From positions 4,526,001 to 4,590,000 of the forward strand of contig OZ281498.1 of assembly GCA_965637545.1 (NCBI GenBank): DNA of 64,000 nt, in the 5' to 3' direction. The position numbers and the translations under genes were made by a program. Below the pieces are notes generated by a model. The model searched no databases, was not told the DNA's origin, and was given only the letters and a program-made list of their open reading frames with translations. This document shows positions 8,301 through 52,000 of this stretch, in pieces. The DNA is from Phallusia mammillata (Eukaryota). Numbering within the stretch: the stretch's first letter is position 1; each line of letters begins with the position of its first letter.

Positions 8301-10627
8301 CTTACTGTATGACCTGTAACAACAAGTTACAAGAAAAAAATGCTATTAAGAATACATTAATTTCCTGTGAAGCAAAATCGACAGGCACAGTAGTAACAGC
8401 ATATGGTTTGTGGTTATTTTAGGTTTCTGCAAAACAATCAAAATTCTCCTCAAGCATATGGGGACCAACATGTGACGGACTCGACCGTATCATTGAGCAT
8501 ATGCTGATGCCACAACTTAACACAGGGGACTGGATAGTCTGGAAAGGTAGTTTGCTCTTGTGATTGCTTTATGACAGTTTATTGTTGGTCTCCTTTATAA
8601 GCGGTTTATTGTTGGTCTCCTCTGACACACGACCTAAGTGGTGGCTATATAATGCGTAAGTAAACGATGGGTTTATGCTTTAGGGTTAATGGTCACACTT
8701 CGTAATGTCTTGTTTTATGTCAGCCAGTAAATCTTCCAAAGGTCCTTTTCTCTAAAACTTGTTGTTTATGGGTTATCAAAATCCTCTACAATTGAAACCT
8801 ATGGCTGTTTTGGCAAGGAAATTTGTTTATCGATTTTTTCAGGCTGAACAAAATGTCCAAATCCCTGGGCCTTTTTAATTCAATCATGTTTTGGTCACTT
8901 GTTTACCATGCTGTTTTACTATCGTTATGGTGTGATCTGTTTCAGACATGGGAGCATATACTATTGCGGCGGGTTCATCTTTCAATGGTTTCAAGACTCA
9001 GAAGGTCTACTATCATATTTCAGATGAAAAAAGGTACACAACTCTTTGAATTGTTGAAGACACATTGATTTGAATAAAATTGGACAGTGTTATAAATACT
9101 TGCCATATGGATTTGCCTCGCATTAATATGTATAGTTGACATATACACTACTACTATAGTATTGTGGATTGAAATTGCTAAGTAAAATCCTTCCTATGTA
9201 ACTATTATTAGTTGATCTTTCTATTTCTCCAGAAAAAGCAGATTAACTTAATCAAAATATCACATAACGTTGATCTGTATAAATTTGTCCAGCTCTTCTT
9301 GCAAAAGAGCTCTCCAAATTTGATATTATGCCTGCCAGCAATAGCTTATATATGTTGATCTGGTTATTTTAAGCAAACCAATTATATTTTTACTAATTTG
9401 TCATCTTGTTTTGGACAAACTGATTGATTTATATTTTCAGTGTGTTTATAGTTAAAACTCGGTTTTGCATGTCAACAGAACAAAACAGATAAAAAGTTGT
9501 TGCAAAGATTAGGTTTTCACAAACAGCTGCACATTTAACAAACAAATCGTGTCTAATCCAAGCAAAGAGCTACGCTTAGGAAATGAAGTCACTACTTTGT
9601 TTGTTGACAGCTGTTCTCCAAAGATAATGTGTGGGATGACGTAATCGATATTGCGCAACTACAACGTTGTGCGTAAACCCTTCTGTGACCTAAGACTTGT
9701 TACCTTAGCTACTGGGTGTTTTGATACTTGCTATTACAAGAAAATGTGGTGTTTTGCAGGGACTTGTTGACAAAATTGGCTGACACAAAAGTGAAGGGAG
9801 TTGAATTCAGCTGTTTTGCGTCATCGATGGTGAGATACAGTTACATATCCGTATTCTCTTCTTTCCAATGCAGTGTATCAAATAACCAGTAGGTCCAGTA
9901 CATATTGGTTCCAAATTTAGCTGTTGTTTAACAGACGATGCAATCTAAATGTTCAAATAAAGGGTTTGTTTTAATGGAGCCGTACATTAAAACTACTTTT
10001 TAAGAAAGTCCACAGCCCAATTTTAACCATTGCAATTATTACACTGCTATTAATCTAATACGTTTATACATTGTATGTCACTTTTTTTTGTTAATCGTAA
10101 AAAGATGATTAGTAAGTCACTATTATCAATTTTAAAGGGCTTAATTGTTGAAGATTATGCTATTACGGGTGACAGTTTCGTCGTCCGAGTTGACTGTTGG
10201 GGTGATTCACAAGACCTCTCCTATGAGTTGGCAGTTAATAAATTATTTTCTTACCACTTCTCAAAAATCGAAATACTTTTAATTGGACTGGTCGTCTGTG
10301 GCTTGAAATATTTTGAGAACCACTGGCCCAGTAAATGTTTTCTTGCAAAATGTTTTTCAGCTTTCTCTGGGCATTCGACTTTGTAATAGTATGCACTACT
10401 GCTGTACATTTTTTTGTGAAATTGTTTTTGAAACAAACGAAACCAACATAACACAACAGAACAGCAATTGGGATTAATGTTAACAAGCAAATAAAACAAA
10501 ATCTTACAACATTTAGTGTTTTCAGGCAAATAAAAAGATCCAGAACTTGACCAAGAAGGAAGCTGCTCCGAAGGATCCAAATCCTATTGGAGAGAACACA
10601 GAGCAACCAATTCCAGTTTACATGTAG
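5328..10627 (+). CDS. ODC1: Ornithine decarboxylase, 11 coding exons, 482 aa predicted
   Basis: Exons 5328-5426, 5496-5669, 6090-6262, 6607-6741, 6803-6968, 7259-7442, 7993-8126, 8423-8546, 8946-9033, 9760-9829, 10526-10627; all GT-AG, phase-consistent, total 1449 nt. Intact motifs: YAIKCN (PLP Lys), [46 protein letters not shown] (catalytic Cys), GAYT. The last two exons rest on splice and phase fit only. Confidence 0.95.
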
Positions 10628-11044
10628 TTTCACTGTAGTCCTACTAGGTTCCATTAGCTGTTGTGTTGCAATAATCTATTCCAAAAATTTTGTTCATCAG
10701 CTGTTTGGGTATGTAAAGGTTAAATTGATTTGCTAAACATTGCTTCAAACAGATTTGTGTGTCAGTGCTATGCCTAAAAATTGTGTCCGCTTCGTTGGTG
10801 ATGGGGACATAGAATGATTTAGTGTGTTTTTATGTTGATGTTTACCGATGTTCTGTTGTAATTCGTTGTGTACAGCAACTATACGAAGCTTGTGTGCCGT
10901 GGGATTGTCTCACGACTGTGTTATAAACCCCCCATTTCGTCAATAGCCTAGCTGTGCTGTTTGGTATTGCTTTAAATTTCATAACCTCTGTTTGCAAAGA
11001 ATAAACTTTTGGCGATTCGGCATTTTCGTGTTTGTTTGCGTAAT

Positions 11045-11418
11045 GGGTGTCCAAAGTGCGGCCGCCGCGACATTTTGCGCGACCCGCGGTTGTTGTTGCA
11101 AGTTGTGTTGCGTATGGCCCGCCAAAGTTTGGATTAAGTTCGGTTGTGGCGAGTTTTCGGAAAAGCTCTCAATGGAAGTTTATTTCCGGTAATCATGTTG
11201 CTGGCGCAAAAAATCCCACAATTTCCTCAAATCCCGTACATTTATGTTCTAGAAATCGAACTCAACTTCGCCGCCTGCACCACACTATAAGGTTACCTTG
11301 CATACACATTGACCATCGTTTTGGCAATTACACGAACCATTTCTTAATTCATCACATTCGTCTGCAGTGGTGCCTATGATAAAAAATTGGCCCCCATTAA
11401 AAAAGTTGTTCACCCCTG
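11045..11418. mobile_element. hAT-type MITE carrying an internal laminin-derived insertion
   Basis: Ends GGGTGTCCAAAGTGCGG...TTGTTCACCCCTG; alignable along its length with the reverse complement of 19523-19830 except for an extra segment at 11281-11375. Left terminus degraded, no TSD seen. Confidence 0.8.
11278..11377 (-). pseudogene. Duplicated fragment of laminin exon 49197-49326 plus its 5' splice site
   Basis: Reverse complement matches 49246-49343 (ATAGGCACC...TGTGTATGCAAG|GTAACCTTA..GTGTGGTG) with 4 substitutions and one 2-nt indel by my count. Confidence 0.95.
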
Positions 11419-12242
11419 GCATATGTAATGATTGCTGTGGCGTCGCTTGGTGTCAATGTAGTTTAAGAGTTTTTCAACCTGTCGCGAAGATAAGAAAAAA
11501 TCACAAACATTTAACCATGAATCTTCACAGCAAGAGGCAACATATCATGGTTTTGCAACACTGAATTTGCAATATTTCTGGTTTTGCTGCAGCTTATCGG
11601 ATCTCCTTGAAATAAAAAATGAAATTGAAGTTCATTGCGATATAAAGGTTGGTTGTGACGCACCAACACACTGACGCAGAAGAAACTACATATTCATAGA
11701 TACTAGATTTGGCACGGTTCCTAAATTCGCATTACAGTCTTCGGAAAAATATTGTATCATCGTCAATAACGTTTTGCAAGACAAATTGTGTTGAGTTGAG
11801 TTTATTTCTCCGGGCAAAATCGTAGCAGCACAATTCCGCTAAAATATTCACCAGGCCGGAAATAGCTGCGCAACGTTCAGACGTTAAAAAACGCGACAAG
11901 ATTGAGGGTAATTGGTAGAGGGATGGTAGACACGCTGCAGCTACACCGTTAAAACCAGCAAAAACTTATTCGAGGCTCATGGCCTCCTCAGGAAGAGTCA
12001 ATCGCCGACACATGTTCAACTTCTGTGACTGACAGAATTGTTACCGCAACCTTCTGGGAGTTGTAGGAGTTCAAGAAACCCTATTAGTTTTTTTGCCCAT
12101 TTGTAAAACTCAAAATTAAAATAAATTGTATCCTCCCATTTAGAGCAAACACAATTTTGTAAAGAAAAATACATCATATCATGACGTTACAACAATGCTT
12201 TTTAAAGATGGCTGTTGCGTTCAGGTGTTTTTTACAGTATTC

Positions 12243-14097: not shown

Positions 14098-14538
14098 ATG
14101 TCTTGGGATAAATACTGCAGTGACACATGTGAGTCATTGAAAATTGCTAAACTTGCTATATTCGGCATATGTGAAAAAACCCAAGCATGCACATTGTGGG
14201 GAAAATTTCCAGAAGATTTTGGTTTTGCTCCGGATTACTTACAGAAGGCCGTTAAAAGCATAGAAAATCATGATTATACTCAATTTCAATGCAATGGAGT
14301 ATATGAACCAAATGGAAATAAATACATATATGTTAGGGATGTTCCTGCAGCCTGTGGTGATGCAATAGTTGCCAAAAAGTCAAAGGATTGTGGTGAAACA
14401 AGGGATCACATAGTAATTTTGGACAGTCGAAACTTCGGTGCTGTTGCTGTCTTTCCGAGTCATGGTCAGCAAGCTGGTGATGATGTTGCAGTACTCAATC
14501 AGGTGGTTGAAAGTTGCAAAAAACATGCTGGCTTGTAA
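14098..14538 (+). CDS. Divergent profilin-like protein, single coding exon, 146 aa
   Basis: Starts MSWDKY (profilin MSWxxY), with AIFG, LWG, NGNKYIYVRD, IVAKK and a C-terminal helix ending KKHAGL. Size and motif order fit the profilin fold. CAC-A-ATG start context; candidate acceptor at 14042-14043. Confidence 0.7.
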   Translation: MSWDKYCSDTCESLKIAKLAIFGICEKTQACTLWGKFPEDFGFAPDYLQKAVKSIENHDYTQFQCNGVYEPNGNKYIYVRDVPAACGDAIVAKKSKDCGETRDHIVILDSRNFGAVAVFPSHGQQAGDDVAVLNQVVESCKKHAGL

Positions 14539-19522: not shown

Positions 19523-19830
19523 CAGAGGTGTCAAACCTTTTTTAATCGGGGCCAATTTTTATCATGTGCAGACGCGGGCCAACGTATTTTTGCAAAGTTT
19601 TTAACTGTACAATTATAACACAAAACATAAGGCATTTAAGGACGTTTTGGGATTTGTTTTGCGTCAGTACCATGTAAACATTTTTAAAAGACCCATGGAA
19701 AAGCTTTTGCGTGAAGTCGCAAGCCGCCACAACCCAAAACCTTAATTCCAATTATGGCGGGCCACACGCAACAAAATTTGCAACAACAGCCACTTGAAAT
19801 GCCGTCGCGGGTCGCACTTTGGACACCCTG
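19523..19830. mobile_element. hAT-type MITE, same family as 11045-11418, without insertion
   Basis: Termini CAGAGGTGTCAAA / TTTGGACACCCTG; homologous to the 11-kb copy in opposite orientation. Confidence 0.75.
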
Positions 19831-49000: not shown

Positions 49001-52000
49001 CCTATTTTGTTGTCCGCAGCTGTGTAACTGCAGTGATGTTGGTTCTCTGTTTACAAACACGTGCGATAACTCAACCGGCCAATGTACATGCAAACCCGAA
49101 TACGACGGCAGACAATGTAACACTTGCAAGTAAGTAGTCAACAGATATCGAATATTAGTAGCTTCCTATACAGCTAACCACGAGTCACTATTTTAGGCGT
49201 GGATTCTACGGTTATCCCAACTGCAGACCGTGCAACTGCAACAAAATAGGCACCGCTGCAGACGAATGTGATGAGTCTAGAAATGGTTCGTGTAATTGCC
49301 AAAACGATGGTCAATGTGTATGCAAGGTAACCTTAGTGTGGTGTACGGCACACAGACTGTAGAATATGGCATATCATTGTTTATGTTTTAAGGCAAACGT
49401 GGTTGGAAAACAATGTGATCAATGCGGCGAAGGATACTTCGGTCTGAGTGAAAGCAACCCACTAGGATGCAGCGAGTGCTTCTGTTTCGGAGCAGCAGAC
49501 CTCTGCATCGCTGCTCAGGGATACTCCTGGGGTCCTCCGGTAAGATCAGCAACAAGCATTTGTGAAATTATTGCTCATACAAATAATTCAGTCTCAAATG
49601 AATCGTAAACACTACCGATATATGATTTTTGCAATATTCGATCAAAAAAGCCACCATGCTGACCATGTTTCTGCTTACTTACCGACAGATCGTCTTACAA
49701 GACCCATTTGAGATTGTGGTGAGGATACGGTGTGTTCTCACATACAAATTAACTCGCGCGCAATGCAATTTAAGCTAACCCGGGACTGTGCAATAATTAG
49801 AAAATAGTGAACCTAAAAGCTAAACCGACTGCGCATTTCTGTTTTTACTAACAGCTTCCACAAGATCATCACGCAGCTATACTTTTCTATAAATGCAGCG
49901 GTTGTTATTGCTCATTTAATAGCGGGCGTTTATTTTGTGCTCAGTGCTGTAGTAGCGCCTAAAACACAGCTTGTTGCGCTTTCCGTGCTCTAATGAATGA
50001 ATACATTTGGAAACAATTCGTTAGCCGTTACTAAAATTGGCTGGTGTTTAAATTATCTCCATCAAAAGATCCTGTGATTTCACAGTGATCATTGGCAATA
50101 TTGCATGAAAATTTTAGTCCCTAATCTGCGCACCTTTGTTCTGCACCGTTCAAAGTTGGGGTGATAACGTGTTCGTTTGCTTAGATTGCGCTTAATTCGG
50201 CGCCAGTAGAGGTTTTGAACCCCTCTGGTATGGCGAACAGAATTGAGGGTCTCATCGCTACCAGAGATGCTGAGGTACGTGATGCAGATGTTGTGATACG
50301 GGATATACACAGTCAACCATACTACTGGCGTCTTCCGGAACAGTTTAACGGCGACAAGGTTCGTACAGCAAAACGACACGCTAAACCGGTGTAAAAAACT
50401 CAAATTTTTGTTTTCCGCAGTTGCTTTCCTACGGAGGCAAACTGAGGTATACAATATACCATGTCTCCCAAGTATCGTTTGAAGATGAAGAAATCGTAAA
50501 GCCAAGTGTAGTTTTAAAAGGCGGTCGGGGAAGCAAAATAACCATTCAGTATCAGTTGGACAGCCCTCAAACCGGCCAGAGCAGAGATTATGTCGTTTCA
50601 ATGCGTGAGGTAGGTTTGTAGAACATTGGATGGAAGACTGCTTTTTATAGTACCATTCACAATACTTTATCACAGCTTGGGTGGACACACCTAGACACCA
50701 GCAGAAGTGTGACTCGAGCCGAATTTGCAACAATCCTTAGTGACATCGAGTTTTTCCTGATCAAGGCAACATACGGCCGCTTGATGGGGCAGTCGAGGTT
50801 GGTATCGCATGCGAAAACAACTTTTACAAACAGGAGGCAGGGCCGGCAGGGTCTAGGGCGCTCAAACAGACATCAAAAAACAATTGGGCATTGCTTCGAA
50901 CCCCGCATAAAAAATCTTTACAAACAGTAAAAACACGGACGATCAACTTGTGTTTCTTTTTTGTAGGCTGAGCAACGTTTTTCTGGATATCGCCCAAACC
51001 ATGATACGAGGACGTGGCGATGCAGGCTCCAATTATCCACCTGCAACAAGTATTGAACAATGCTTTTGCTACCCAGGATATACAGGTTCCTCTTGTCAGG
51101 TTGGTAAACTTTATGACCTTAGTTCATTAGATTTCGATTCAATTGAACAATTTCTTGTTGCAGAACTGTGACAGCGGATATATGAGAATCCAACAGGGTT
51201 CAAACTATGGACGGTGTGAAGCTTGCAACTGCAACAACCGAAGTAGCACTTGCGACATAATGACAGGGGTCTGTTTGGTAAGAAAACAATTAGGCATTAA
51301 ATTTCGTGTGTTTTTATTTAAACCTTGGACTTAACAGAACTGCCAGGACAAGTTCATTGGTGTCCAGTGTGAAATGTGCTCGCCGGGATACTACCTGTCA
51401 GGTAACGAATGCAGGAAATGTGCGTGCCCTGGACCAGATCCTTTCCAAAATTTCAGCCCCAATTGCCACCCGGATGGAGCGGACGGAATCGCCGATTATA
51501 CGTGCGATGCATGTAAAACAGGATACGAAGGAAAACATTGTGAACGGTATGTAAATTTGAAATCAAATCGACAGTATCGAATATGACAACATGCTGATAC
51601 ATTTGCGGCACTTGACACGTTACACCTTGATATTAAATACCACCAAACAAGTGTGAATTGTACCGTATGTTTGGTAAAGGTGCTCGGATGGCTACTACGG
51701 GGATCCTACCCACCCTGGAGGTTTCTGTGCCAAGTGCGGATGCAACGTCGCAGGTTCCCTGGATGGTGTTTGCGACAAGGTCACAGGGCAATGCCGATGC
51801 GATGAAGGCATCTCGGGTAGAATTTGTGACCAATGTATGCCACGACATATTATCTCCCACTCCGGGTGCCAAGGTAGGACTGCATTGCCGAATTCTTGAT
51901 GTTGCTTCTAAGAACCTCCAAGCTAATCCATGGTTTTTTTGTAGAATGCAATGATGGTTGTTCCAGCAAACTTCTCGACGATATTGAAATTTTGACCTAC

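What the first reader, a model, noticed from the sequence alone, without database searches (positions are those of the whole stretch)
11045..11418. hAT MITE that has captured a laminin exon fragment from 38 kb away
Seen: relative to its sister copy (19523-19830, which reads ...GTCTGCAC|ATGATAAAAATTGGCCCC), this copy has about 95 extra bases inserted exactly at that junction. The insert is the inverted copy of laminin 49246-49343: 81 nt of coding exon, the GTAACC donor and intron start. There is 3-nt (CAC) and 2-nt (AT) microhomology at the ends, no evident loss of MITE sequence, and only 4 substitutions plus a 2-nt indel. The intron sequence shows the template was DNA or unspliced RNA. Known: Pack-MULEs and Helitrons capture gene fragments, and templated insertions with microhomology are typical of polymerase-theta or SDSA repair. 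Inference: a local gene-capture event that could seed a Pack-hAT family, shuffle an LE module with a working donor, or yield antisense RNA to laminin.
Basis: partly seen in the sequence, partly recalled or inferred. Interest (0 to 1): 0.75.

Follow-up and report, generated by a model that had tools for sequence, protein, structure and literature searches.

The report
Laminin exon scrap inside old transposon
An old, decayed copy of a small hAT jumping element in a sea-squirt genome carries a 95-base patch copied backwards from a laminin exon-intron boundary 38 kb away; it is a real but one-off DNA-repair scar of an already described kind, and there is no sign that it moved or is transcribed.

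Summary
Window 11042-11418 is a degenerate copy of a roughly 315-bp hAT MITE family. Window 11278-11377 is the reverse complement of laminin alpha 49246-49343: 81 nt of exon, the GT donor and 17 nt of intron. It differs by 4 substitutions and a 2-nt TA duplication. With the net 95 nt removed, the copy is colinear with 26 other family members across the junction, so no MITE sequence was lost. The junctions share CAC and AT.

An independent DNA run has a 266-nt contig that matches 11315-11580 exactly. It carries the copy-specific variants and crosses the right junction, so this is not an assembly chimera. The left junction was not shown independently.

The 240-Mb genome has exactly two copies of the stretch, the donor and this one, so nothing was mobilised. 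The host copy is about 19% diverged, with mutated ends and a decayed target duplication, whereas the patch is only 4% from its donor. The patch was therefore added long after insertion.

Two RNA runs show no transcript over it. It encodes only part of an LE domain.

It fits the single-copy Pack-TIR class described in animals (PMC8277862): break repair by template switching, near in cis, with short microhomology. It is a new member of a known kind and of low interest.

The parts
11042..11280 (+). Left arm of the degenerate hAT MITE copy. The 5' inverted repeat reads AATGGGTGTCCAAAG against the family's CAGGGGTGTCCAAAS. The arm ends ...CTGCAC.
   Evidence: Family alignments; BLAST to 30 genomic copies at 72-77%.
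11278..11377 (-). Laminin-derived stretch, inverted relative to the donor. 11297-11377 is 81 nt (27 codons) of exon and 11278-11296 is the GT donor plus intron start, with a TA duplication at 11286-11287. The net insert is 11281-11375 (95 nt). CAC at the left and AT at the right are shared with the MITE.
   Evidence: alignment and mismatch positions; only two genomic copies; translations differ at 2 of 27 residues.
11376..11418 (+). Right arm of the MITE (ATGATAAAAAATTGGCCCCCATTAAAAAAGTTGTTCACCCCTG), ending in the 3' inverted repeat.
   Evidence: An independent DNA contig (run X2, record 10) covers 11315-11580 with 0 differences.
49246..49343 (+). Donor: the last 81 nt of a laminin alpha exon (exon 49197-49326, first part of an LE domain) plus the first 17 nt of the following intron.
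   Evidence: Pfam EGF_laminin hits are weak on this exon and 28.5 bits on the next exon. The spliced mRNA contigs stop matching at the exon end.
19523..19830 (-). It is from the same old subfamily, about 74% identical, with an uninterrupted junction GTCTGCAC|ATGAT.
10525..11020 (+). Last exon and 3' UTR of the upstream ornithine decarboxylase gene, with AATAAA at 11001-11006. RNA contigs end at 11020, so the MITE sits about 22 nt past the polyadenylation site.
   Evidence: spliced RNA contigs 9758-9828 / 10525-11020, GT..AG joints; Orn_Arg_deC_N on upstream exons.

Best explanation
This is a single-copy 'Pack-TIR' type repair scar.

Shown:
- An old, already decayed copy of a Buster-type hAT MITE lies just past the 3' end of the ODC gene.
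- It contains 95 net bases copied from the laminin alpha exon/intron boundary 38 kb downstream on the same chromosome, in inverted orientation.
- The junctions are CAC and AT, no MITE sequence is lost, and the piece exists nowhere else in the genome.

Inferred:
- The copy suffered a double-strand break between ...CTGCAC and ATGAT....
- One 3' end annealed by 2-3 nt of microhomology to the laminin locus, either as DNA or possibly as nascent unspliced RNA.
- That end was extended for about 98 nt, released, and joined to the other end by another 2-3 nt of microhomology. This is gap filling by template switching, independent of transposition.
- The three substitutions within 4 nt and the TA duplication may be errors of that low-fidelity synthesis.

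Since then the piece has stayed where it was made. It is not mobilised, it shows no transcript in the two RNA runs examined, and I infer it has no function.
For: 1. Structure: searches give exact junctions, colinearity with 26 family members once 95 nt are removed, and no loss of MITE sequence.
2. Direction of copying: none of 26 other members has the stretch, and the laminin copy is a spliced coding exon.
3. Unspliced template: 17 nt of intron are included.
4. Uniqueness: only two genomic matches in 240 Mb, and no other laminin piece within 5-23 kb of the window.
5. Timing: copy A is 18.7% from its subfamily majority and 24% from the whole-family majority. Its first three bases read AAT for CAG and its TSD matches at 4 of 8 positions. 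The patch is only 4/98 diverged from its donor. Young family members are 0.3-1.8% from their majority and have perfect TSDs.
6. Cis proximity: a donor within 38 kb has a chance probability of about 3e-4 in this genome.
7. Microhomology: a pair of this size or larger occurred in 1.6% of random junction pairs.
8. Reality: an independent DNA run holds the diverged patch joined to the right arm and unique flank, 266 nt with 0 differences.
9. Published class: single-copy Pack-TIRs in 100 animal genomes show cis bias, microhomology (median 2 bp), internal breakpoints, small gaps and origin after transposition (PMC8277862).
Against: - The left junction (11280|11281) was not shown in an independent run. 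The contigs listed break in the MITE and at k-mers shared with laminin, so it rests on the assembly alone.
- A second DNA run (X4, about 8x) has no contig over 11088-11794, so presence/absence polymorphism cannot be judged.
- Nothing identifies the polymerase or the cause of the break.
- The timing argument assumes similar neutral rates in the MITE and the patch. It also rests on a MITE majority rule built from only 8 old-subfamily copies.
Confidence: 0.8

Rival explanations
1. Transposition-dependent capture, i.e. abortive gap repair. The MITE was excised by hAT transposase. The gap was refilled from the sister chromatid by synthesis-dependent strand annealing, and the nascent strand switched briefly to the laminin locus. 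This is the model proposed for Ds and P-element derivatives.
For: - The genome has many hAT transposase genes with long open frames, including a 660-aa frame found at six places with the same score.
- A 2362-bp element with this family's ends encodes hAT domains.
- Young family members exist.
- Gene fragments with introns occur in maize Ds elements, and their capture has been attributed to repair after excision (PMC3260210).
Against: - The copy has mutated terminal bases and no recognisable TSD.
- It was already far more diverged than the patch when the patch arose (19% against 4%), so it is a poor substrate for excision.
- Two-ended gap repair usually leaves internal deletions, and here there is none.
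- For animal single-copy cases the transposition-independent route is the one supported.
Confidence: 0.08
2. Capture of a free fragment, or RNA-templated repair. Either a released single- or double-stranded piece of the laminin locus was ligated into the break by end joining, or nascent laminin pre-mRNA served as the template for a reverse-transcribing repair polymerase.
For: - The intron content allows pre-mRNA as template, and the strand logic works: the left 3' end CAC pairs with GUG in the intron (sequence).
- Insertions from distant loci at breaks are documented in yeast (PMC11724301).
- RNA-mediated end-joining repair is the subject of a paper seen only by title and abstract in the listing (PMC11390984).
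Against: - The outcome cannot be distinguished from DNA template switching.
- Free fragments need not come from nearby, yet the donor is 38 kb away in cis (P about 3e-4). That favours a proximity-dependent copying step, although nascent RNA is also local.
Confidence: 0.08
3. A functional or mobilised Pack-hAT. The chimeric element transposes, or it supplies antisense laminin RNA or an LE-coding exon.
For: The laminin reading frame in the patch is still open over its 27 codons. On the + strand the patch would be antisense to laminin if ODC transcription read through.
Against: - It is single copy.
- In two RNA runs, all depth over 11171-11504 is accounted for by laminin mRNA contigs carrying the donor's letters, and there is none over 11505-11671. 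ODC contigs stop at 11020.
- The patch has 2 amino-acid changes in 27 codons (A to T, S to L) and covers only part of an LE domain, with no Pfam hit.
Confidence: 0.03
4. Assembly chimera or misjoin.
For: The left junction was not independently shown.
Against: - The patch differs from the donor at 4 sites plus an indel, which a misjoin would not produce.
- An independent run from a different individual (it differs from the window at other sites) has the diverged patch joined to the right arm and the unique flank.
Confidence: 0.01

Closest known systems
Single-copy Pack-TIRs of animals (Tan et al. 2021, Nat Commun, PMC8277862)
   Same: - A TIR DNA transposon holds a short non-TE filler whose parental copy is identifiable.
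- It is single copy, and the donor is on the same chromosome.
- Microhomology of 2-3 nt sits at the breakpoints, against a published median of 2 bp.
- The breakpoint is internal, and almost no TE sequence is lost (published median gap 4.6%).
- It arose after the TE had inserted.
   Different: - The host is a tunicate. 'Ciona' does not occur in that paper's main text, and I did not check its species list.
- The filler is small (95 nt).
- The donor distance of 38 kb is larger than the less-than-5-kb distance that the paper reports for some of its intrachromosomal cases.
Gene-fragment-bearing Ds / Ds-like elements of maize (Du et al. 2011, PMC3260210); abortive gap repair model
   Same: Both are hAT-superfamily non-autonomous elements carrying filler DNA that is sometimes matched to genes, includes introns, and is therefore copied from genomic DNA.
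   Different: - The maize donors described are on other chromosomes.
- The maize elements usually have large internal replacements.
- Here the filler is added without loss, next to its donor, in a decayed copy.
Pack-MULE / Pack-TYPE elements of plants (PMC8903248)
   Same: A non-autonomous DNA transposon carries host exon sequence between its terminal repeats.
   Different: [quoted passage not shown] This one is unique, decayed and silent in the RNA data available.
Templated insertions at double-strand breaks (polymerase-theta end joining; MMBIR/FoSTeS template switching; PMC11724301, PMC8421209)
   Same: A copied stretch is bounded by 2-3 nt microhomologies, there is local error-prone-looking sequence change, and the orientation is inverted.
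   Different: From my own recollection, not tested here, polymerase-theta insertions are usually shorter and templated within tens to hundreds of bases of the break. No pathway can be assigned from sequence.

Membership tests
hAT superfamily, Buster-type MITE | 8-bp target site duplication | tested here: met
   By eye on the alignment, about 18 of 26 full-length members have identical 8-bp flanks and 4 more match at 7/8. This particular copy matches at only 4/8 (GTTTGCGT / GCATATGT), so it is decayed.
hAT superfamily, Buster-type MITE | TSD consensus nnnTAnnn (Buster family; PMC3517528) | tested here: met
   In one search nearly all intact TSDs have TA at positions 4-5, for example GCCTAACT, GTTTAGAG, CTGTAAGC.
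hAT superfamily, Buster-type MITE | Short terminal inverted repeats beginning CAG | tested here: met
   The family ends are CAGGGGTGTCCAAAS. There are 161 + 168 exact hits in the genome against 1 + 1 for the reversed control. In this copy the first three bases read AAT.
hAT superfamily, Buster-type MITE | A longer element with the same ends encodes a hAT transposase | tested here: met
   L044 302-2663 (2362 bp) has the same terminal and subterminal sequence. Its frames hit zf-C2H2_12 (41.9 bits), DUF4371 (25.9 bits, below the cut-off) and Dimer_Tnp_hAT (25.0 bits, cut-off 21.4). Whether that copy is active was not tested.
Pack-TIR / Pack-TYPE element | Host (non-TE) sequence lies between both termini of one TIR element, with an identifiable parental copy | tested here: met
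Pack-TIR / Pack-TYPE element | Mobilised after capture (multicopy) | tested here: not met
   Only the donor and this copy exist in 240 Mb. It therefore belongs to the 'single-copy' subclass only.
Pack-TIR / Pack-TYPE element | Transcribed or chimeric with a host gene | tested here: not met
   No RNA contig lies on copy-specific sequence in runs X7 and X19, and the ODC transcript ends at 11020. Contigs cannot exclude rare RNA.
Retrocopy (processed, mRNA-derived) | Lacks introns; has a poly(A) tail | tested here: not met
   The patch includes the GT donor and 17 nt of intron and has no A-tail.
Polymerase-theta templated insertion | Dependence on POLQ; template close to the break | not testable with these tools
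   Microhomology is present, but the template is 38 kb away and 98 nt long. The enzyme cannot be inferred.

The most novel reading that the evidence does not exclude
The patch sits about 260 nt past the ODC poly(A) site in the ODC sense direction. Read-through ODC transcripts would therefore carry 81 nt antisense to a laminin alpha coding exon. This could give double-stranded RNA or small RNAs that couple ODC transcription to laminin alpha expression. Alternatively, the event could be a natural record of repair templated by nascent pre-mRNA.
Probability: 0.03. Interest if true: 0.55.

Novelty: new member of a known kind. Interest (0 to 1): 0.25.

Why it matters
It is a clean natural example, apparently in a tunicate, of how double-strand-break repair pastes a nearby gene fragment into a resident DNA transposon. 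The donor, both junctions and the relative timing can all be read from the sequence. It adds one data point to the view that single-copy Pack-TIRs in animals arise by proximity-driven template switching and not by transposition. It does not create a new gene, a mobile gene-carrying family or a detectable regulatory RNA, so its biological consequence is probably nil.

Tried and rejected
1. Further copies of the chimera: a whole-genome search with the element and with the patch alone found none.
2. Other laminin pieces near 11 kb: a window self-BLAST found none, so this is not a larger segmental duplication.
3. Whether this family often picks up genes: two other members with extra internal DNA (L012, about 650 bp; L045, about 200 bp) were searched genome-wide. 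Both inserts are high-copy repeats, meaning nested transposons, not gene captures.
4. TIRs in the 12 best hAT-transposase loci: there was no match to this family's ends. The parent-like element was instead found from TIR pairs 2.3 kb apart.
5. A joint in run X2 that skips 11244-11382 (139 nt, 25-nt side, letters between unknown). I considered it as a possible insert-free allele and rejected it as uninformative. It does not coincide with the 95-nt insert, and it is what a contig from a paralogous MITE copy would give at 90% likeness.
6. The 8-nt motif CGTCTGCA is shared by the sister MITE just left of the break and by the patch near its far end. It is not at either junction and is not intact in copy A (GC-CTGCA), so I treat it as probable coincidence.
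7. Earlier scan notes for similar captures: none.
8. No outgroup genome was available to polarise the four substitutions.
9. One procedural point: I joined three ODC exons inside a local script only to read the C-terminal frame and stop. That joined model was not sent to any search tool.

Full report
**What is there**

Window 11042-11418 is a copy of a MITE family whose members are about 310-330 bp long. Their ends read CAGGGGTGTCCAAAS, and most are flanked by 8-bp target duplications with TA at positions 4-5. The genome is 240 Mb, with the matches falling on eight contigs (C1-C8), and earlier notes of this scan call it a sea squirt. It holds 161 + 168 exact matches to the 15-nt end, against 1 + 1 for the reversed control.

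A 2362-bp element with the same terminal and subterminal sequence (L044 302-2663) encodes open frames that hit a zinc finger, DUF4371 and the hAT C-terminal dimerisation domain. The 8-bp nnnTAnnn duplication is the Buster-family signature within hAT (PMC3517528).

**The insert**

Positions 11278-11377 are the reverse complement of 49246-49343. Of 98 donor positions, 94 are identical. There is a TA duplication at 11286-11287. Three substitutions are crowded into 4 nt (11345, 11346, 11348), and one CpG transition lies at 11368.

The donor is the 3' 81 nt of an exon that encodes the first part of a laminin-type EGF domain, plus GTAACC and 11 further intron bases. Pfam gives a weak partial hit on this exon and 28.5 bits on the next exon. 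Laminin mRNA contigs in two RNA runs match the patch only over the exon part and then run on into the next exon. The donor splice site is therefore in use and the patch does contain intron.

When the 95 net bases (11281-11375) are removed, the copy aligns without a gap at that point to the sister at 19523-19830 and to 25 further members. CAC on the left and AT on the right fit both MITE and laminin. A microhomology pair of this size or larger occurred in 1.6% of simulated random junctions.

**Is it real?**

Run X2 is a DNA data set from another study, and it differs from the window at many other sites. It has a 266-nt contig identical to 11315-11580. That contig carries the four copy-specific letters and crosses the right junction into unique flank. 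It begins exactly 30 nt before the first copy-specific letter, which is where a 31-mer graph must branch away from the laminin exon.

The left junction was not among the pieces listed, so it rests on the assembly. Run X4 (about 8x) has no contig over 11088-11794, which says nothing either way. The 6% difference from the donor argues on its own against a misjoin.

**Was it mobilised, and is it used?**

It was not mobilised. The patch has exactly two places in the genome, and no other laminin piece lies between 5 and 23 kb of the window.

The host copy is poorly placed to move:
- Its first three bases are AAT instead of CAG.
- Its flanks match at only 4 of 8 positions.
- It is 18.7% from the majority of its old subfamily and 24% from the whole-family majority, while young members are 0.3-1.8% from theirs.

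The patch is only about 4% from its donor. It is less if the 3-in-4 cluster is counted as one event of sloppy synthesis. So it was added long after the MITE landed.

On use, the element lies between genes. The upstream gene is ornithine decarboxylase (Pfam on its exons). Its last exon, 10525-11020, ends about 15 nt after AATAAA in the RNA contigs. A profilin-like frame at 14098-14538 lies between the MITE and laminin alpha, which by earlier notes starts at 24.7-36 kb.

In both RNA runs, all depth over 11171-11504 is arithmetically accounted for by the laminin mRNA contigs, which carry the donor's letters. Depth over 11505-11671 is zero. There is thus no evidence for an antisense transcript, although contigs cannot exclude rare read-through.

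The patch keeps 27 open codons with two replacements (A to T, S to L). That is only part of an LE domain and gets no Pfam hit.

**Mechanism**

[quoted passage not shown] That study attributes the single-copy cases to transposition-independent gap filling by template switching (PMC8277862). The shared features are:
- a single copy;
- a donor in cis at 38 kb (chance about 3e-4);
- 2-3 nt microhomology at both ends;
- an internal breakpoint;
- no loss of element sequence;
- origin after insertion.

I infer a break between CTGCAC and ATGAT, annealing of one 3' end at CAC or AT on the laminin locus, about 98 nt of synthesis, release, and joining through the second microhomology.

Excision-triggered abortive gap repair, the Ds/P-element model (PMC3260210), is a weaker rival because the copy was already decayed and shows no internal deletion. 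Ligation of a released fragment, or copying from nascent unspliced RNA, would give the same product and cannot be excluded. The polymerase cannot be named.

**Comparison and verdict**

[quoted passage not shown] Two other members of this family with extra internal DNA turned out to hold nested repeats, not genes.

The finding is therefore a genuine and neatly readable example of a known process, with no evidence of consequence. It is a new member of a known kind and of low interest.

Noticed in passing
L044:302-2663 (G000:C2:4475301-4477662): A 2362-bp element with this MITE family's ends carries frames of 112 aa (Spin-doc zinc finger) and 502 aa (DUF4371 plus hAT dimerisation domain). It is the likely parent type of the MITE family. 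Its flanks match at 6 of 8 positions.
   Followed up: partly
L032-L037 (six chromosomes): The hAT dimerisation-domain search found a 660-aa open frame at six places with the same score, and at least 150 hAT-domain matches overall. The copies were not aligned. This suggests another hAT family, without this MITE's ends, that was active very recently.
   Followed up: no
L046:173-631 (G000:C1:3967872-3968330): A young MITE copy (97% identical to L019) is preceded 130 bp upstream by a second, solitary 5' end of the same family. This may be a tandem or aborted insertion.
   Followed up: no
L045:227-430 and L012:1649-2301: These are nested high-copy repeats inside two MITE copies. The L045 insert belongs to a palindromic repeat of about 120-175 bp that often occurs in short arrays spaced about 280 bp apart.
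   Followed up: partly
window 14098-14538 (+): A 146-aa open frame gives a profilin hit (29.1 bits, cut-off 25) between ODC and laminin alpha, apparently in a single exon.
   Followed up: no
window 11088-11794: DNA run X4 (and X5, same sample) has no contig over this stretch, including unique sequence at 11505-11671, while run X2 covers it. This could be low depth or a structural allele lacking the region.
   Followed up: no
window 9167-9500 and 11672-12005: Two very high-copy repeats flank the region, with summed contig depth in the thousands to tens of thousands in the DNA runs. Many contigs join or end at 9352/9353 and at 11817-11910.
   Followed up: no
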